Below are positions 689 to 28,309 of a stretch of DNA of 64,000 bases, piece after piece. The notes below the pieces were generated by a model. The model was not told the DNA's origin. It did no database searches and worked only from the letters and a program-made list of their open reading frames with translations. Source of the DNA: Octopus sinensis (taxonomy: Eukaryota); the NCBI RefSeq assembly GCF_006345805.1, contig NC_042998.1, positions 190,278,001 through 190,342,000 on the forward strand. The letters run 5' to 3'. The translations under genes were made by a program, and so were the position numbers. How positions within the stretch are numbered: the stretch's first letter is position 1; every line of letters starts with the position of its first letter.

Positions 689-2862
689 TTAAGTGACAGC
701 AAAACTCAATTCCAAGTTGTGAGGGAAATTGCAATTCACTTTTTGTCAAATTTCTTGTCACCCAAGTCAACAACCCTAGTTTTAATATTTCCACTTTGAG
801 TTCAGTATCTAGAATTTTGACGATGGAATTTCAGATCCAAAGCATAACAATTCAACATGTTCTTACACCAGTTACATGAATGAAATTCTAATTGTTTTTT
901 TTTTAATACTTCTCTGAAGATGTACAGAGTGGAGAAACCATGAAGCTGTGATATATGTAAATATTTCCTAAACTTCAGTATCATGTATGACGCAGATGAA
1001 GGAAATATCTACACCTAAATAGGATACCAGTTTATCACATCTAACATACCAGATGATCTAAACCATTTCCTGAAGTCTAAGTGAATTGAGGCAATGTAGA
1101 GTGAACTGCTATACTCAAAAACACAAGAAAGATTCAGTAGATTAAATTGAATTATCTATAAGAGGTAGTCCAAGAAGGTAATAATACCCATGTTGTGCGT
1201 GTGTGTGTGTCTATGTCAGCAAATGATGTTAACAGTAGTGAGAAACCTGATTAACAGGTGTGTTCAAACAAAAATACCTTGTATAGTATTTATTCCTTCT
1301 ATATCGCATTGATAGTAATTTGTAAATATAGTGAAATAATGAGGTCCATTGGAAACATGTAACCAATGATGTTATTGTACACAAAATGCAAATATAAAAT
1401 TATTATATTCTAAATACATCATATCTGTGCAGCTTAAGCCCAACACATTCCAACAACATTTTGTGTACGAAATCATTAAATATAATAAAAAAAAGACTTA
1501 TGTCAAGCACAAACTCGGAAATGGTAAATTCAATTTCTTATCAAACTGAGCTTACTTTCTTCATTAGCAAAACTAAGAAACAATATAATTAGATAAAATT
1601 AAAACAACTTTATATATCAAGAGATCCAACATTATGAAAATCAGCAGAACAGGAAAACTCAACTTTAAAAAAAAATTCTTGGATAAAAAGGGGATGAAAA
1701 ATAATGAATATTATTTAAAAGCAAATCCTCATTAGAGTTAAACTACAATAGAGTTAAATTTTAATCACAGTGAACATCGTGTGCAAACACTTGATTTTTA
1801 TCTGGCAAATGTCAACAAGGCTCAATGTTCCCATCATGCCTTAGTAGTAGCCATTCTACCAATAATGTTGTAATTAACTTTACATATCATGCAATAGGAT
1901 CAATTTTATGAAACATTCCTGAAATAGTTTTATAGAAAATAGTGGATGCACCTTTGACACTAGCTCACAGAACAACAAGCATCATTTGTATTTAAATGTG
2001 TACTACAGAGGTTGGTCAGTTACATAAATCATGTTAGTGTTTAAATCAGCCAAGTAAGTCCTTACTGTAAAAATACCAAGTGCCCAACATCTTATATCAA
2101 GAACATACTTGCACTGTTTGATGGATAAAGTGAAGAGAAACCTGAAGCAATGTGGAAGAATGAATATCAAGTTCTAATGAACCATTCCCCCATAGGCAAG
2201 GAATCTTGGGAAATGTGTGCATCACCAAACATACAGATGCTGAGAAGAAATAATTTTAGGAAAAAAGACAATTCAACTGTGAAGTATGTGATATCAGTTG
2301 TAGGTATCATGTAATTTTTAAGGAGATCAATATTTGCATCTATACTGAAATCTGCATTGTCGTAGTCACAACAACAACGGTCGGTTGATTTATTGATGGT
2401 ACATCACTTCCAAACGCTCTCTCTCACACACACATATACACTATCAATACTCCAAGAAAGAAAATGGACTGGTTTAACTTCCAGAACTACTTCACACACC
2501 TACACATACAGATATACAGTGGGGGTGGGGAGAAACATTCATGTAGAAAAAAATTTGTAATAATACACTTGTAGTGTCAAGTTGTCAAACAGAGAACTGA
2601 TTACAACGATCAAGTAGAATACAAAACACATTTTAATTGTAGGTGTGTATTTTACTAACACTTCAACCTCCCTCATCATCATCATCATTCAAAAATACCC
2701 ACTGTATATTACTTAGCAGTGTAATTAGACATACTAAATAATAGAGACAATAGATGTGTCTAAAGTTACAAAAAAATATTCAATATTTCTGTCAGGTTAA
2801 TTTTTTGAGACAATTTAAATTCAAATAGTTATCACATCCAATATTCTATTGAATGTGTGTAT

Positions 2863-8116: not shown

Positions 8117-8226
8117 CTATTTTCAGAAGAGAACAGGGCAAATGTAGGACGTCTCGACAATATTCCGGCTTCGACATCACGAACTTTCAAGTTGTCCACT
8201 GGGAGCATATATTTCTTTTCTTTTTC
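8117..8226 (-). CDS. dnm: Dynamin exon 14 (110 nt): [36 protein letters not shown](R), PH middle part
   Basis: cctttgtag acceptor, gtatct donor; phase 0 to 2. Confidence 0.98.
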
Positions 8227-11466: not shown

Positions 11467-13642
11467 CCATTTCTTATAGTCCTTGTCACCTCCATTCTGT
11501 CATCCACTTCCCTCCTTGCACCATCAGGTTGGCAAATGACTCCTGGTGGCTTTCTTCACAAGAATTATGTGCTTGTTGTGGCATGTTCATAGGGGAATAT
11601 AGAGGTATTTTCCTATTGCTTTTGTTTGGATAGTATTTAACAGGACACCATCTCAATGACCAGAACAGCAAAGTTTGCCACATCTGCCTGCAGATTCAGA
11701 ACAAAGAACCAGAACAGATACCATAAAGCATATTATCTAATACTCTAACGATTCTACCAATCCTCCACTCCGGACTGGTACTTTATTTTACTGACCCCAG
11801 AGGGATAAGAGGCAAAACAGACCACTGAGGGAGCTGAGGTCAGAATATAAAAAACCAAATTAGATACCAGAAGGCATTTTATTTGATGCTTTAACAATTC
11901 TGACAATCCACCAACTTTCCCATGTAACTGTATATATCTTTATGAAGTTATGTAATGAGGACATGACAACAGCACCAAAACATTTATCAAAGAAACACAC
12001 AACTCATAATTAAACCATTCAAATTCTTTACAAGTGATAGGTTTCATTTTCTCTAGAGATCTTTCATAGCAGCTACACATAACAAAAACATAACCAAAAT
12101 TGCTATCAAAGCCAAGGTTTTTTTTCATGAAAAATAGAAAATACTTCGACTCTGACAAAAAAATTAAAAAACAATTCTGCCTAACATCCAAAAGAGGATA
12201 ACTAACTGATAAGCATATTTTAACTAATACAAGATATTGTAAAGTCTAACATTTGTAGAGAGCCTAGAAGGTTTAGCTGTGAACTGTTAATGAGCTGAAA
12301 AAGTGCATTCAACCTCCTCCTCTACTGTAACAGTTTTCTTTCTCTGAGTTGATAAAACTGTATACACTCACCCTACCAAACACTCAATGCACCTGCTTTT
12401 CTTCCTCACATCAGACTTATTAAACATTTCGTTCAATCCATTCTCCTTAGTATTCAACCTGCTCATGTTTTGCTCACAAATGTCAACCACCAGTGGAAAT
12501 TCATGCTGGATATCAACCACATCAAACTCACACAAGCTTAGAGGAATCTGCAAAGGCTATGGGCATTCCTTTTCTTTCTCAAACTAAAATAAAAAAAATT
12601 TTCTTTAACAAACCGTATATTTATGCCCAGTTAGACTGACACAAATGATCAATAAGGTGATGCCAGTCATATCAAACCAACATAAAATATGGCAATAAAG
12701 GACCAGTATAAACAATATTCAACATTTCTTGCTTCTTTCTTTAATTAAATTTCTGAAAATTATGCTTTCTAATGAAATTTTTTGTGAGAGTGGGGTATTA
12801 TCATTGTCTCAAAATGATAACTGTACATAATTATCAATAAATTGCTGACAGCAGCATCACACTAAGCCGACAGCAAAACAATTATTTGTTGCCAAGCAGT
12901 AAATGATGATGGCAGAATCTAAATAAAAATCATCCTCATTCCTACTAAGACCTCACTGGGTTAGTGCAGTATCTGAATGTTATGCTAAATAGCTGATGAG
13001 GTTGGAACCTGATCACTCTTTCTTCAAAGCCAAATTACAATTGCACGGAAAAGCAATGTAACCTAATTAACATTCATAACAACCTAATGCTTCACAGTTA
13101 CAAAACAAAAAAAAAAAAACATTTGAGAAAAACAATCCTACAGAATGTTAATATAGACAACCTGTAACAGTTGCTTTCAACAACTGGCAGTAATAATATA
13201 ATAAGTAAGTAGTTCTTGAGCAAGAATGTGCTAAAAAGAAGATTACTCAGTAAACACAGCCAGACAAAAATGCCAGTACTAATGATGTAAAAACACACCA
13301 AAGTCCTTCCGGGGTTTATTTTTTTTTTATCGTTCACTTGTTTCAGACTGTGGCCTTGTTTGAGATTCGTTCTTATACAATATTGTAATTTAAAATTTTT
13401 TTCTGGTCTATATATTTTTATTTTATTTTGTCAACTTGACCTAATTCTTATAACATAAATAATAATAATGTGAGAATTCAGTTAATAAAATTTATGCAAA
13501 AAAAAAAAACTAATTTATATTGCAAGCAGCATTTTAATTTACCAATATGTAAAAAAAAAAAAAAAAATGGTAAATCAAACTGGCAAAGAAGCCTCTACAT
13601 GTTCAGTCAACCTGCTTGAGATAACAGCCAAATCACGCTTAA

Positions 13643-13861
13643 CTCTTTAGCATTCAGACTATTCTGTCAAATATAATATTTATTCATCCATATTGTTTTA
13701 AGCTAATCATGCATTATTCCGTAGCTTTAAGATTTCGATGATGTTATCACCTGTTTTTAGATTGACATTATAGGTTGGTGTGAGATACCAAATCTGGGCA
13801 GTTTAAACAGAAAACAGGTAGATTATTTGGGCCGGATAAGGCCGGTTTAAACACTAAAGGG
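13643..13861. mobile_element. TTAA-flanked (piggyBac-like) MITE
   Basis: TTAA at 13639-42 and 13862-65; ctctttag/ctaaaggg termini; similar to 15362-15592. Confidence 0.75.
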
Positions 13862-15361
13862 TTAAATCACACTTAAACTCTATTATCTTAAAAAAAGGAA
13901 AGGCACATTGGATAACATAGTCCTAAGTCCGAGAAAAAGATTAGATCACTATAATTCAATCAGATTTAACCTAAATAACAATAACAAGTTGATAATTTTA
14001 CTAAAGCCCAACTAAATTCTTATTGTTTTGAAAATTAATTGAAAGACAGATAATGCATTCTAATAAGAAATGTTCCCTGAAAGGTAAATCTGAAGATTAC
14101 TAATATTAAAATATATCAGTAACAAATGTTGGAGATGGCAGAAGTGAAAAAGAAGTGTTTTCTGTTCTTGCTTTGCTTCATTTTCCAAAACTTGAAGGCA
14201 AGTGAAATTCAGTGTATAGAAATTTTTAGCGAGTAGATAAACAATTTACTAAATATTGAAGTGTCATTTGAAAGATTGCTGTAAGATCATATCTGAGAGA
14301 GATGTTTTCGTGCATGTTATTTAGATGGCATTTCAAAACTGAAGAAGTAAATTAGGATGTTATACCGATAAATAAAAATGTGCTGTTTTAATCATTGTGT
14401 AACAGTATCCTCTACTTGAATATGCTTTAGAAAATGAAATTGTGAGAAAATAATCTTTATTTGCCCTGAAGTGGAAAATATAAAGAACTTGTTACTGGAT
14501 ATTATCATCATATTACTAAAGAAAATATATAGAGTTACTATGGGATTTATGAAGAATTTAGCCATTTAAGTATATACACCACACAGTTTGTGAAAATTTA
14601 TCAACTTTTCATGTATTCACGTGCATGCATGCATGAGTGTGTATGTGTGTGTGTGTGCATGTATATACTTTGCAAAGAAAAGGTTGACAGTGACTGTGAA
14701 GTTTCTACTTACTAGCCATCATCGAACTGCAATGTAGTTAGGGTCTCCAAGATTTATATATATATAGTTTTTTTTTTTTTCAATGATGGAGTCACCCAGT
14801 GGATATGCAACTGCACATTCATACAAACATATCCAAAAATATGCATATAAACAGTGTATAATTTCATAAAGATATGCATTAAAAAAAATACATATACACA
14901 TATTCACATTCACACATATACATATATCATCATTTAACATCCACTTTCCCATGCTTATTTTGTTTTCTACAGCTGGATGCTGACAGTGGAGAAAGTGAAA
15001 GGAAAATTTAGTAACCAAATTAACAAATAATTAGAATGCTTACAAGGCCCAACATTTAACGAGAAAAGATTATAAAATACAGTAAAGCATAATAATTTAC
15101 AAAATCAAATCTCTCTATACTACACATTTTAGGCTGGATAACAAATTTTCCATAATACTAGATTTTACTTCTTATGTTATTGCACATTTTAATTACCTCA
15201 GTGTTTATCAAAGAGAAACTTTTTTTATGGTTGTTCGACCTGCTGTAAATGTTTCTCAGATCACACTCCACCAGCTTCATAAAGAACACTTTGGATAATA
15301 TGGTTCTAGGTTCTCTACATGTAGCAAAAAAGCAGGACAATCTTGACTGGAATGCCTTTAA

Positions 15362-15592
15362 CCCTTTAGTGTTTAAATTATTCAGTTAAATGTAATACTT
15401 CTTCATTCAAATTCATCATCATCAACTTGAATTAATCATGCATTATCTTATAGCTTTTGAGGTTTCAATGTTGTGATTGTTTATTTTTAGAATGTCACTG
15501 TAGATTAGGTGTGAGAGGCCAGATATTGCCAGTCTGAATATAAAACATGTAGAATATTTGAGCCAGATATGGCCGGTTTAAACACTAAAGGG
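15362..15592. mobile_element. TTAA-flanked (piggyBac-like) MITE
   Basis: TTAA at 15358-61 and 15593-96; TIR ccctttagtgtttaaa / tttaaacactaaaggg. Confidence 0.8.
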
Positions 15593-16124
15593 TTAAATAT
15601 AGGTCTGCTTGATAAAGACTGACCTGAAGCTGAACAATAACTAAATATATACCTTAGGAGAGTACACTACAAACTAATTCTTATATACACAATAAGAATT
15701 AATGCTACACATCCAATCAATTCATTCACACATTTTTCTTTTACATCAGTAAACATTCCATGAGTTCTTGCCAGCATTTTAACTCAGTGCTTCTCAAATT
15801 ACATATCAAAAATATTTCTATTTCACTGCAAATTTCACAGAAATAAAATAACTTATGTAATATATAGCACACTGTCACAGTATCTCTGACAAAGCAGACA
15901 GTTGATAACAAACATATAACATGTGTCATACTGACACAAAGAAGGAATGGTGACACAATGAAGAAATATCACACGCAACAGACCACTAGCATCAGAAGTG
16001 AGATTCATTACCACTAACATTCTGTAACTGTTATGAATTAATCCATACACAATATTAAGTTCTATATAGAGAAATATTTCAAATATTAAACACAATTAAA
16101 AATAAAAGAATTATATATACATAC

Positions 16125-16238
16125 CTCTTCATCTTTAAACCAAGAGAAAGTTTCTGCTGTCAGGACAAACCAAAAGTCTTTCGATCCACCTTTCATGAAG
16201 CTGATATTGTGCAAGGTCAACCACCCTCGACGTATTAC
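16125..16238 (-). CDS. dnm: Dynamin exon 13 (114 nt): [41 protein letters not shown]-terminal part
   Basis: cattttccag acceptor, gtatgt donor; phase 0 to 0. Confidence 0.98.
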
Positions 16239-17865: not shown

Positions 17866-17871
17866 ACGTAC

Positions 17872-17920
17872 TTGATTCCCTAGTTTTCTTTTACTGGTGT
17901 TTTCAGACTTTTGTTGAGCA
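17872..17920 (-). CDS. dnm: Dynamin exon 12 (49 nt): AQQKSENTSKRKLGNQ, stalk-PH linker
   Basis: gtgttttttag acceptor, gtacgt donor; phase 2 to 0; AQQ...GNQ as in other dynamins. Confidence 0.95.
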
Positions 17921-18457
17921 CTAAAAAAACACAAATAAATAGTATTAGTTTGAAATAAAATATTTTGCTCTGAATTGATAAAACTGATTACACAATAAAA
18001 AAGCTGGTAGCATTTTTGTTTCTATCAACATTATTCGCGACAGGACAAATATATAAACTTAATATATAGGAGAAAATACAAAAAAAAAACAATTAAAGAC
18101 AATCACAACAATGAACAAAAAACACCAGTATTGCAGTGATAACACCTAGAATTGAAGTAAGTAAGATGTACAGCATGTCCTTTACAGCCATGCCCTTCAC
18201 CACTCCCTTTCTCTGTCAAGAGGTGCTTGTCTTGCAAGCTTGTACCACATAAAAAGCATCCGTTTCAGTGTCATGTAAAAAACACCCATTTCACTGACAC
18301 ATAATAAGTGCTCATTTTAGTGTCAGGGAAAAACACCCATGCTTGTTCTATGTGAAGGCACCTGTGCCAGTTCCACATAAACGGCACCTAAGCAGGTGCC
18401 ACATAAGAAGAACCCATGCTGATGCAAGGTAAAAGCGCCCATGCTGGTGTCATATAA

Positions 18458-26496: not shown

Positions 26497-26700
26497 CCTC
26501 ACCATTTAACGTCTGTTGTCCATGCTGGCATGGGTTGAAAGGTTTGACTGGGCTGGCACGCTGGAAGACTGCACCAGACTCCAGTCTGATTTGGCAAGGT
26601 TTTCTATGGCTGGGTGCCCTTCCTAATGCCAACCACTCCGAGAGTGTAATGGGTGCTTTTTATGTGCCACTGGCAAGGGTGCCATTTGCACAACACCAGA
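26497..26700 (-). mobile_element. RTE-LINE 3'-end repeat
   Basis: Family core sequence, diverged. Confidence 0.75.
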
Positions 26701-26970
26701 ATCATAGCACAACTAATTAGGGAGAGTGTCATAGCCCAACTAATTAGAGAGAGAGTCATAGCCCAACTAATTAGGGAGAGAGTCATAGCCCAACTAATTA
26801 GAGAGAGAGTCATAACCCAACTAATTAGGGAGAGAGTCATAGCCCAACTAATTAGGGAGAGGGTCATAGCCCAACTAATTAGGGAGAGGGTCATAGCCCA
26901 ACTAATTAGGGAGAGGGTCATAGCCCAACTAATTAGGGAGAGGGTCATAGCCCAACTAATTAGGGAGAGA
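26701..26970 (+). repeat. 27-bp tandem repeat, 10 copies (VIAQLIRER), in frame with the LINE RT
   Basis: gtcatagcccaactaattagggagaga with period 27; ORF 26653..27171. Confidence 0.98.
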
Positions 26971-28309
26971 GTCAGTCTAGACGAGATGCAGTTTGGGTTA
27001 GTGCCAGGGAAAAGCACCACTGATGCTATATTTCTGATAAGACAGCTGCAGGAGAAATACCTGACCACAGATAAACCGCTGTACCTAGCTTTCATTGACA
27101 TGGAGAAAGCCTTTGACAGGGGTCCTCCCATCCCTTACCTAGTGGTCAATGAGGAAACTAGGAATAGATGAGTGGTTAGTGAGAGCTGTACAAGCCATGT
27201 ACAGGGATGCTGTCAGTAAGGTGAGGGTTGGTAACGAGTACAGTGAAGAATTCCAGGTAGGGATCCACCAAGGATCAGTTTTCAGCCCCCTCCTATTCTT
27301 CAAAGTCCTCCAGGCAATAACAGAGAAATTCAAGACAGGATGACCCTGGGAGCTTCTTTCTCTATGCTGATGATCTTGCTCTATTAGCTGAGTTACTATC
27401 AGAACTAGAGGAGAAGTTTCAGGTGTGAAAGCAAAGTCTAGAATTGAAGGACCTTAGAGTCAACCTAGCAAAAACTAAAGTTTTAATAAGTAGGAAGGCA
27501 GACAAACCACAAATCCCTTCAGGAAGTTGGCCCTGCTCAATCTTTAGAAAACGTGTAGGTAGACACTCCATAAGATGTACTCAGTGTAGGCTATGGACAC
27601 ATAAGAGGTGCAGCAATATCAAAAGAAGACAAACTGGGAAGATAGTCTTTGTTTGTGACAAATGCTCAGGAGTAATAAACACTGAAAATGTGCATGACAG
27701 AGTGTAAGTGCCCTGGGAGAAAAGTTGGACTTAAGAAGCATCAGATGTGGTGAGCAAGAGAGACGATTGCACTGGTATGGTCATGTGTTGCAAATGGTTG
27801 AGGACAGCTGTGTGAAAAAGTGTCACACCCTAGCAGTAGAGAGAACTTGTGGAAGAGGTAGACTCAGTAAGACCTGGGATGAGGTGGTGAAGTACGACCT
27901 TCAAACAATGGGCCTCACTGAGGCAATGACTAGTGACTGAAACCTTTGGGATATGCTGTGCTTGAGAAGACCCGGCAAGCCAAATGAGACCATAACCATG
28001 GCCTATGCCTAACTGGCTCCTGTGCCGGTGACACATAATAAATACCATTCGAGCATAGTTGCTGCCAATGCTGCCTGACTGGCTCCTGTGCTGGTGGCAT
28101 ATAAAAAGCACCAACTGATCATAACCGCTGCCAGCCTTCCCTGGCACGTAAAAAGCAGTCTTCTATTAAAGCATGGGGAAATATTACTTTGCTTGGAAAC
28201 AGGTGAGGATTGACAACAGACGAGGCATCTGATTGTAGTAAACTTATCTCAGCAAATTCTGCCTGACTCATGCAAGCATAGTAAAATGAATGTTAAAATG
28301 ATGATGATG
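26971..28309 (+). mobile_element. 5'-truncated, internally deleted RTE-clade LINE (RT pseudogene + 3'UTR + GAT tail)
   Basis: QFGLVPGKSTTDAIF, AFIDMEKAFDR, GIHQGSVFSPLLF, YADD at 27363, a Cys/His finger, RRLHWYGHV and GRGRLSKTW; frameshifts and stops. Confidence 0.95.

What the first reader, a model, noticed from the sequence alone, without database searches (positions are those of the whole stretch)
15197..15346. Apparent diverged tandem duplicate of the dynamin PH exon (EKEKK...NTE) inside the preceding intron
Seen: the minus-strand frame ILSKVFFMKLVECDLRNIYSRSNNHKKSFSLINTE is followed directly by donor GAG|gtaatt. It aligns without gaps to exon 14 ([35 protein letters not shown]; identities K4, R16, F29, L31, E35, with the hydrophobic pattern kept). 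Against human DNM1 as I recall it ([35 protein letters not shown]) I count 9 of 35 identities, including NTE. Possible acceptors: ttccag at 15347 (phase 0, 150-nt exon, in frame with exon 13) or atgtag at 15315 (phase 2). Inference: an alternative or mutually exclusive PH exon with altered lipid-binding loops, or its decaying remnant. Caveats: the donor phase (0) differs from exon 14 (2), and a MITE sits just upstream of the phase-0 acceptor.
Basis: partly seen in the sequence, partly recalled or inferred. Interest (0 to 1): 0.72.

Follow-up and report, generated by a model that had tools for sequence, protein, structure and literature searches.

The report
Decayed extra copy of dynamin PH exon
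An intron of this dynamin gene holds what is most likely a broken, very diverged extra copy of the neighbouring PH-domain exon; five other invertebrate contigs carry that exon as three intact tandem copies, so this is a modest evolutionary relic rather than a working alternative exon.

Summary

- **Similarity to the gene's own exon 14:** it is at chance level. Simulated 64-kb windows reach the same score 45% of the time.
- **Similarity to the exon family:** it is better than chance. In an in-register, end-to-end comparison the candidate is the best non-self window of 18,405. Three statistics give window-wide P of about 0.003-0.014.
- **Pfam PH model:** the candidate adds 6.3 bits to exon 13, more than any of 27 controls.
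- **Local searches:** hmmsearch, nhmmer and tblastn are all non-significant.
- **Relatives:** five large invertebrate contigs of unknown host carry this exon as three intact tandem copies with matching splice phases. One cDNA-like contig uses the second type.
- **Function:** the candidate cannot replace exon 14. Its donor is in phase 0, not 2. The only good acceptor reads straight into a stop. The in-frame acceptor is weak and abuts the MITE. The invariant EKxKKYML motif is gone.

Verdict: probably a dead remnant of an old tandem exon duplication (about 0.6). Chance is about 0.2 and a working exon about 0.12. No cephalopod comparison or RNA data could be reached.

The parts
15197..15301 (-). 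Similarity core of the candidate, 35 codons (ILSKVFFMKLVECDLRNIYSRSNNHKKSFSLINTE). It aligns in register, without gaps, to the dynamin PH exon that encodes strands beta4-beta6.
   Evidence: Best non-self window of 18,405 open windows by profile score, +6.1 bits against a next unrelated score of -8.8. It stays on top when stops are allowed. BLOSUM62 scores are 43 against b-type, 35 against a-type and 30 against a vertebrate copy, where the best unrelated windows score 16-21. Simulated P is 0.003-0.014.
15302..15346 (-). They have no counterpart in the exon family.
   Evidence: They resemble neither the end of exon 13 nor the start of the exon family, by direct reading.
15301..15314 (-). AGAACCT AGAACCA, an apparent 7-nt tandem duplication between the good acceptor and the similarity core. 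Without one copy, that acceptor would be in frame with the core. This is inference only.
   Evidence: Sequence read, frames, and the MAFFT alignment that places catgtag|AGAAC opposite gtttag|GAGAA.
15315..15340 (-). Pyrimidine-rich tract plus AG (15316-15315). This is the only acceptor here that looks like the gene's real ones. From exon 13 it reads AGA ACC TAG, a stop.
   Evidence: 15/20 pyrimidines. Real acceptors of this gene are T-rich.
15347..15348 (-). AG of the phase-0 acceptor (ttccag|). It is weak and purine-rich upstream, 9 nt from the MITE end.
   Evidence: 8/20 pyrimidines. MITE boundary.
15195..15196 (-). GT of the donor GAG|gtaatt, in phase 0. It lies 5 nt earlier than the homologous donor of intact copies (…GAG AAT AG|gtaac).
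   Evidence: For example, a_L002 reads AACACTGAGAATAG|GTAACA where the candidate reads AACACTGAG|GTAATT.
15357..15597 (.). MITE with perfect 21-nt terminal inverted repeats and TTAA ends, which look piggyBac-like. It does not overlap the candidate.
   Evidence: Other copies lie at 13639-13867 and 463-692.
16125..16238 (-). Dynamin exon 13 (VIRRGW…FKDEE), the start of the PH domain. Its donor is in phase 0.
8117..8226 (-). Intact PH exon 14 (EKEKKYML…FALFSSEN + AG). It is 110 nt, with a phase-0 acceptor and a phase-2 donor.
   Evidence: Profile score 87.6 bits.
2224..2328 (-). Possible second relic, here called r2328, in intron 14 (DLLKNYMIPTTDITYFTVELSFFLKLFLLSICMFG). It is closest to c-like copies. 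No splice sites lie in register.
   Evidence: Second-best non-self window, +2.1 bits. P is about 0.05 by profile simulation and 0.12-0.14 by BLOSUM. It is not a repeat.

Best explanation
The candidate is most likely a pseudo-exon: the decayed remnant of an old tandem duplication of the dynamin exon that encodes PH-domain strands beta4-beta6. In other invertebrates this exon survives as three intact tandem copies, here called a, b and c. All three share a phase-0 acceptor and a phase-2 donor, and their lengths are not multiples of three. That is the usual layout of mutually exclusive exons.

In this gene only exon 14 is intact. The candidate keeps the hydrophobic and polar pattern and the C-terminal KKSFSLINTE. 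It has lost the invariant N-terminal motif and usable splice phases.

If the spliceosome used it, there are three possible outcomes. From the good acceptor the message would carry an early stop. From the weak acceptor, with exon 14 kept, the PH domain would gain a 50-residue in-frame insert. If it replaced exon 14, the message would be frameshifted.

Shown here: the in-register similarity, the position and strand, the splice-phase defects, and the tandem triplication in relatives. Inferred: common descent, the two small indels that would account for the phase defects, and the absence of function.
For: **1. Similarity to the exon family**
- End-to-end profile score is +6.1 to +6.4 bits. That is rank 1 among non-self windows, out of 18,405 open windows and about 128,000 windows when stops are allowed.
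- None of 20,000 shuffles of the peptide reaches that score.
- Markov-3 and Markov-5 simulations of the window give P(max >= observed) = 0.010-0.014.
- In 513 kb of other real DNA the best unrelated window scores 1.3.

**2.
- BLOSUM62 scores are 38-43 against b-type and 31-35 against a-type.
- P is 0.0075 after choosing the best of 13 references, and 0.0025 for the mean of the 13.

**3. Both halves contribute**
- The N-terminal half is in the top 0.13% of windows and the C-terminal half in the top 0.022%. The two halves are uncorrelated in the null.

**4. General PH model**
- Pfam PH scores 16.1 bits for exon 13 alone, 22.4 with the candidate and 27.4 with exon 14.
- Seventeen shuffles give 16.0-20.2 and ten random intron frames give 15.0-17.9.

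**5. Context**
- The candidate is on the gene's strand, in the intron next to exon 14.
- The same exon is triplicated in L001, L003, L085 and L086, with the same a-b-c order and intact AG/GT sites. L002 shows a and b before the contig ends.
- The cDNA-like contig L005 uses a b-type copy.

**6. Disabling features**.

**7. Ancestral residues**: the candidate carries L10, S20, N33 and T34, which exon 14 of this gene has changed. This fits a duplication older than those changes.
Against: - Local searches are not significant within the window. hmmsearch gives 5-9 bits at E 0.2-4, and several unrelated frames score higher. nhmmer gives E = 5.3. tblastn gives E 0.14-0.4.
- Nucleotide identity to the gene's own exon 14 is at background, 31/105.
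- Identity to b-type DNA, 53/105, is only at the top of the null range, where the next window reaches 51.
- A sequence drifting freely for a very long time should not stay recognisable. So either the copy died fairly recently or part of the signal is luck.
- The candidate lies upstream of exon 14, which looks a-like. No copy lies upstream of a in the five relatives, so orthology to a particular copy is unresolved.
- The hosts of those contigs are unknown.
- The finding was picked by eye, and that selection effect cannot be fully quantified.
Confidence: 0.6

Rival explanations
1. Chance resemblance. An ordinary open frame in an AT-rich intron happens to carry a PH-like alternation of hydrophobic and polar residues, and a GT happens to follow it.
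For: - The comparison with the gene's own exon 14 is at chance level, P = 0.45.
- All local profile and DNA searches are non-significant.
- Open frames of 75 codons or more are common here, 125 in the window.
- The excess of matches at second codon positions (18/35 against 7 and 6 at the first and third) is what selecting on amino-acid similarity would produce anyway.
- Only 3 of the 13 positions where the b-type copy differs from both exon 14 and human DNM1 match the candidate. This is my own count from the sequences.
Against: - Window-wide P is 0.003-0.014 on three statistics, before strand and position are counted.
- No unrelated window in 513 kb of other real DNA comes near the score.
- Both halves score independently.
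- The independent Pfam PH model prefers the candidate to all 27 controls.
- The flagged exon is exactly the one that is tandemly triplicated in relatives.
Confidence: 0.2
2. A working, highly diverged alternative exon. It could be a 150-nt in-frame cassette from acceptor 15347 that inserts 50 residues into the beta3-beta4 loop. It could be a regulated poison exon. Or it could pair with an unseen downstream exon in a matching phase.
For: - The frame stays open for 75 codons and a plausible donor sits at its end.
- The pattern fits the PH model.
- Similarity is retained at the protein level but not at the DNA level to its neighbour exon 14. That pattern is what long-term constraint would leave.
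- The a/b/c clusters show that this exon is used for isoform diversity elsewhere.
Against: - The donor phase cannot join exon 15 in frame.
- The in-frame acceptor lacks the T-rich tract that every real acceptor of this gene has, and it abuts a MITE.
- The good acceptor gives an immediate stop.
- Residues that are invariant in about 80 dynamin loci (E1, K2, K5, Y6, D11, D17, G21) are lost.
- No protein in the 5.8-billion-sequence collection contains this peptide.
Confidence: 0.12
3. The element comes from something else: the neighbouring MITE or another transposon, or a fragment of a processed dynamin pseudogene inserted in the intron.
For: The intron is rich in repeats.
Against: - The candidate lies outside the MITE and is not repeated anywhere in the window.
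- Pfam finds no domain match and the protein search finds no homologue.
- Similarity stops at the exon borders. The flanks resemble neither exon 13 nor exon 15, by direct reading. A retrocopy would carry that flanking similarity.
Confidence: 0.03

Closest known systems
Vertebrate Dnm1/Dnm2 exon 10a/10b, a mutually exclusive pair in the middle domain
   Same: Same gene family. Tandem duplication of one internal exon gives alternative versions of one structural segment (PMC2916854).
   Different: The domain differs: middle domain there, PH domain here. Both vertebrate copies are intact and expressed. That paper states that invertebrate dynamins lack that pair. The candidate here is disabled.
Three-copy PH-exon cluster (a, b, c) found here in the ENA contigs behind L001, L002, L003, L085 and L086
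   Same: It is the same exon, with the same borders, on the same side of exon 13. The candidate aligns in register to the a and b copies at 10-11/35 identity.
   Different: Those copies are intact: AG acceptor in phase 0, GT donor in phase 2, and lengths of 110, 113 and 113 nt. They keep the EKxK[KR][YF][ML]L start. The candidate does none of this, and it sits upstream of the a-like exon, where those loci have nothing.
Tandem exon duplication and its decayed pseudo-exon remnants, a general phenomenon
   Same: A diverged copy of an exon lies in the adjacent intron on the same strand, with broken frame and splice phases. A genome-wide human survey of mutually exclusive exons came up in the search (PMC5740500). 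I did not read it.
   Different: Nothing in kind. This would simply be a new example.

Membership tests
PH domain (Pfam PF00169), dynamin beta4-beta6 exon | Significant match of the peptide on its own to a PH or dynamin-exon profile | tested here: not met
   The 50-aa peptide alone matches no Pfam family at E <= 10. The local exon profile gives 5-9 bits, E 0.2-4, within the window.
PH domain (Pfam PF00169), dynamin beta4-beta6 exon | In-register, full-length fit to the exon family beyond composition-matched controls | tested here: met
   +6.1 to +6.4 bits, the top non-self window. P is 0.010-0.014 by simulation, and 0 of 20,000 shuffles reach it. The candidate adds 6.3 bits to Pfam PH when joined to exon 13, above 27 of 27 controls.
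PH domain (Pfam PF00169), dynamin beta4-beta6 exon | Nearly invariant start E-K-x-K-[KR]-[YF]-[ML]-L, and D11, D17 and G21 | tested here: not met
   The candidate has I-L-S-K-V-F-F-M, V11, N17 and R21. About 80 loci keep the motif.
Mutually exclusive exon cluster | Sequence homology to the neighbouring alternative exon | tested here: inconclusive
   Against the gene's own exon 14, P = 0.45. Against the family, P is about 0.003-0.014.
Mutually exclusive exon cluster | Same splice phases as its partner, so that either exon keeps the frame | tested here: not met
   Donor phase is 0 against 2 for exon 14. Only the phase-0 frame is open.
Mutually exclusive exon cluster | Competent acceptor and donor | tested here: inconclusive
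   The donor GAG|gtaatt is plausible. The in-frame acceptor has 8/20 pyrimidines. The good acceptor, 15/20, gives a stop. No splice-site scoring model was available.
Mutually exclusive exon cluster | Transcripts that contain one copy or the other, never both | not testable with these tools
   No RNA data for this species could be reached. The protein collection holds nothing with this peptide.
Pseudo-exon remnant of a tandem exon duplication | Lies in the intron next to the parent exon, on the same strand, with similarity confined to the exon | tested here: met
   It is in intron 13, on the minus strand. The flanks are unlike exons 13 and 15.
Pseudo-exon remnant of a tandem exon duplication | Disabling lesions: frame, phase or stop | tested here: met
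Pseudo-exon remnant of a tandem exon duplication | Intact or decayed counterpart at the same place in related species | not testable with these tools
   No cephalopod genome could be reached. More distant invertebrate contigs have intact copies, but not at this exact position.
Transposon-derived (exonised MITE) sequence | Overlap with, or similarity to, a repeated element | tested here: not met
   The candidate is single-copy in the window and lies outside the MITE at 15357-15597.

The most novel reading that the evidence does not exclude
The candidate is still used. It would be a very diverged alternative PH-domain exon, or a regulated poison exon, of a cephalopod dynamin. It would be the last working trace of an ancient three-copy PH-exon cluster shared with other invertebrates, giving dynamin isoforms with different membrane-facing loops.
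Probability: 0.1. Interest if true: 0.6.

Novelty: new member of a known kind. Interest (0 to 1): 0.33.

Why it matters
By itself a dead exon copy matters little. Its value is as a pointer. The exon that encodes beta4-beta6 of the dynamin PH domain, with parts of the loops that face the membrane, has been duplicated in tandem and kept as three distinct intact copies in at least five invertebrate contigs. One of the copy types is found in a full-length message.

From my own knowledge, not tested here: several dynamin-2 PH-domain residues changed in Charcot-Marie-Tooth neuropathy lie in this segment. The searches of the held literature returned only the vertebrate middle-domain pair as a mutually exclusive exon set in dynamin.

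If the relic is real, alternative PH domains may once have been available to the cephalopod lineage and were then lost. Dynamin researchers would also gain natural PH-domain variants to compare.

Tried and rejected
- **Candidate frame against the 5.8-billion-protein collection:** no hit at all.
- **Exon 13+14 and b+c exon queries in the same collection:** they returned only fragments, with no cephalopod protein and no spliced transcript of this gene.
- **JGI metagenome scan:** 80 dynamin loci, none from a close relative of the window.
- **Logan contig L004:** it ends about 250 nt after exon 13, too short to cover the candidate's position.
- **Local hmmsearch, nhmmer and tblastn:** all non-significant for the candidate. 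The DNA profile has little power at this divergence. The c-type DNA profile barely detects the real exon 14, at E = 23.
- **Nucleotide identity to the gene's own exon 14:** at background.
- **Open-frame length as evidence:** rejected, because 125 frames of 75 codons or more occur in the window.
- **MITE or repeat origin:** rejected.
- **Retrocopy origin:** rejected, because the flanks show no similarity.
- **Assigning the candidate to a particular copy (a, b or c):** the scores do not discriminate reliably, 31-35 against 38-43, and the gene order does not fit.
- **Structure prediction of a chimeric PH domain:** not attempted. Exons 15 and beyond lie outside the window, and the tool does not accept chimeras.
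- **Taxonomic identity of the ENA contigs:** could not be established.
- **Literature searches for a PH-domain alternative exon in invertebrate dynamin:** nothing found.

Full report
**1. What is at the coordinates**

The minus strand of 15346-15197 reads SRLSCFFATCREPRTILSKVFFMKLVECDLRNIYSRSNNHKKSFSLINTE and is followed by GAG|gtaatt. The stop-to-stop frame is 75 codons long.

It lies in a 7.9-kb intron of a dynamin gene on the minus strand. On one side is the exon VIRRGW…FKDEE (16238-16125, donor in phase 0). On the other is the exon EKEKKYML…FALFSSEN+AG (8226-8117, 110 nt, acceptor in phase 0, donor in phase 2).

A full-length dynamin from a metatranscriptome-like contig (L005) maps to 12 stretches of the window, from 47842 down to 8116. 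Exon 15 is outside the window.

- Identity to exon 14 is 5/35.
- Identity to human DNM1 is 9/35.
- Both acceptors and the phase conflict are as described.
- A MITE occupies 15357-15597, with perfect 21-nt inverted ends. Two more copies lie in the window.

**2. Is the resemblance more than chance?**

The answer depends on what the candidate is compared with.

*Against the gene's own exon 14.* The ungapped BLOSUM62 score is 21. It is the best non-self value in the window, but 45% of simulated windows reach it. A 75-codon open frame is also ordinary here, with 125 such frames in the window.

*Against the exon family.* I built a profile from 35 equivalents of this exon and scored every window in register, end to end.
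- The candidate scores +6.1 bits. The real exon scores 87.6. A second element at 2328 scores +2.1, and everything else scores -8.8 or lower.
- The ranking is unchanged when stops are allowed, which raises the count to about 128,000 windows.
- With the window's own exon left out of the profile, the candidate scores 6.4 bits. P(max >= 6.4) is 0.014 under a Markov-3 null and 0.010 under Markov-5, with 500 simulations each.
- None of 20,000 shuffles of the peptide reaches the score.
- In 513 kb of other real eukaryotic DNA (236,389 open windows) the best unrelated score is 1.3.
- The two halves of the alignment score independently: top 0.13% for the N-terminal half and top 0.022% for the C-terminal half.

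P is 0.0075 after taking the best of 13 references.

*Against the general Pfam PH model.*

| Sequence scored | Bits |
|---|---|
| Exon 13 alone | 16.1 |
| Exon 13 + real exon 14 | 27.4 |
| Exon 13 + candidate | 22.4 |
| Exon 13 + 17 shuffles of the candidate | 16.0-20.2 |
| Exon 13 + 10 random intron frames | 15.0-17.9 |

*Evidence on the other side.*
- Local searches are not significant: hmmsearch E 0.2-4, nhmmer E = 5.3, tblastn E 0.14-0.4.
- DNA identity to exon 14 is at background, 31/105.
- DNA methods have little power at this distance. The c-type DNA profile barely sees the real exon 14.

**3. The decisive context: the same exon is triplicated elsewhere**

Exon-13 frames on large ENA contigs led to L001-L003. 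A search with b-type and c-type exons led to L085 and L086.

- In L001, L003, L085 and L086 the exon is present as three tandem copies in the same order. L002 shows a and b before the contig ends.
  - a: …ESGFFTRHPVFAL..(E)NR, 110 nt
  - b: …MADTGFIKQKKxFAL.NTEQR, 113 nt
  - c: EKEKR[YF]MLPLDGLRL…SSGIFSKKY.F.LFNPDTR, 113 nt
- Each copy has a pyrimidine tract, an AG in phase 0 and a GT in phase 2.
- Their lengths are not multiples of three, which is the usual arrangement for mutually exclusive exons.
- L005, a 3-kb contig with one uninterrupted 867-codon dynamin frame, uses a b-type copy. So at least that type reaches mature message.
- Other genomic loci carry a single copy. Some of these look insect-like to me, from memory of the sequences.
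- The hosts of the five contigs are unknown. Their exon 13 is 89-97% identical in protein to the window's.
- The held literature yielded no report of alternative PH exons in dynamin. The known case is the vertebrate exon 10a/10b pair in the middle domain, which invertebrates are said to lack (PMC2916854).

**4. Can the candidate work as an exon?**

- Up to the donor, only the phase-0 frame is open. The other two frames carry four to six stops.
- Exon 14 hands two bases to exon 15. A replacement ending in phase 0 would therefore shift the frame.
- The real acceptors of this gene all have T-rich tracts.
- The only such acceptor here is tgtcctgcttttttgctacatgtag|, with exon start at 15314. Entered from exon 13 it reads AGA ACC TAG, a stop.
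- The in-frame acceptor (ttccag|, exon start 15346) has 8/20 pyrimidines and sits 9 nt from the MITE end. Used together with exon 14, it would insert 50 residues between strands beta3 and beta4.
- The start of the exon, nearly invariant in about 80 loci (EKxKKYML), reads ILSKVFFM in the candidate.

Two small lesions could account for the phase problems. Both are inference, not shown.
- AGAACCT AGAACCA (15314-15301) looks like a 7-nt tandem duplication. Without one copy, the good acceptor is in frame with the similarity core.
- The 3' end reads AACACTGAG|GTAATT where a-type copies read AACACTGAGAATAG|GTAACA. That is what a 5-nt loss would leave.

**5. Interpretation**

| Reading | Probability |
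|---|---|
| Dead remnant of an old tandem duplication of the PH exon | about 0.6 |
| Chance resemblance | about 0.2 |
| Still-used diverged exon | about 0.12 |
| Transposon or retrocopy origin | about 0.03 |

- **For the remnant reading:** the candidate carries residues that most relatives have but exon 14 of this gene has changed (L10, S20, N33, T34). This fits a duplication older than those changes. It also explains why the candidate resembles distant copies more than its own neighbour.
- **Chance is not excluded:** the element was picked by eye, local tests fail, and only 3 of the 13 positions specific to the b-type match.
- **A working exon is unlikely** for the reasons in section 4, but it cannot be excluded without RNA data.
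- **Transposon or retrocopy origin is rejected:** the element is single-copy in the window and the similarity stops at the exon borders.

One point remains unexplained. A freely drifting copy should not stay recognisable across a deep divergence, so the loss would have to be fairly recent. The candidate also lies upstream of the a-like exon 14, where the five relatives have nothing. Orthology to a particular copy is therefore open.

**6. A possible second relic**

The element at 2328-2224, on the minus strand in intron 14, reads DLLKNYMIPTTDITYFTVELSFFLKLFLLSICMFG.
- It is the second-best non-self window.
- In none of 1,000 simulations did the second-best window reach its score.
- It is closest to c-like copies, at 11/35 identity to P0007.
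- It is not a repeat.
- It has no in-register splice sites, and by BLOSUM its P is only 0.12-0.14.
- I rate it about even.

If it is real, the gene once had copies on both sides of exon 14.

**7. Verdict**

The "working alternative exon" half is not supported. This is an ordinary kind of feature, a pseudo-exon left by tandem exon duplication, in a gene where it had not been noted.

The more interesting by-product is the intact three-copy PH-exon cluster in other invertebrates. Comparison with other cephalopod genomes and splice-junction reads would settle the matter. Neither was available here.

Noticed in passing
L001:14320-16094, L003:14975-16654, L085:7728-10096, L086:6788-10096, L002:15527-18609: The dynamin PH exon (beta4-beta6) is present as three intact tandem copies, a, b and c, of 110, 113 and 113 nt. 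All have AG in phase 0 and GT in phase 2, and the order is the same in every contig. The copies are about 0.5-2.9 kb apart. They sit on five large ENA metagenome-assembly contigs of unknown animal hosts. This looks like an undescribed mutually exclusive exon cluster.
   Followed up: partly
L005:1726-1839 (whole frame covers most of the 3010-nt contig): A cDNA-like JGI contig encodes an uninterrupted 867-residue dynamin. Its PH exon is b-type ([38 protein letters not shown]). So the b variant is used in mature message in some organism.
   Followed up: partly
window 2224-2328 (minus strand): A second weak in-register match to the PH exon lies in the intron downstream of exon 14. It is closest to c-like copies and may be another relic. 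No splice sites are in register.
   Followed up: partly
window 15357-15597, 13639-13867, 463-692: A family of about 240-nt MITEs with perfect 21-nt inverted ends (TTTAACCCTTTAGTGTTTAAA) and TTAA at both ends, which looks piggyBac-like. Three copies lie in the introns flanking exon 14, at 68-73% identity to one another.
   Followed up: partly
window about 26650-27170, both strands: A long open frame is made of a short tandem repeat (…LIRERVIAQLIRERVIAQ… on the plus strand, …LSLISWAMT… on the minus strand) inside a dynamin intron.
   Followed up: no
window about 7049, 31018, 42667, 54697 (plus strand) and 57631 (minus strand): Several open frames share the motif …FLQLDALPNANHS..VVGAF…. This suggests a dispersed repeat family with at least five copies in the window.
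   Followed up: no
window 17869-17937 and 16125-16238, compared with L001:10058-10219: The window (and L004) has an intron between …KLGNQ and VIRRGW…. L001-L003 lack it, and there the two parts form one exon.
   Followed up: no
protein P0027: A protein labelled 'hypothetical protein, partial [Pseudomonas aeruginosa]' by NCBI is an animal dynamin fragment (…[19 protein letters not shown]…[18 protein letters not shown]…). It is probably contamination in that assembly.
   Followed up: no
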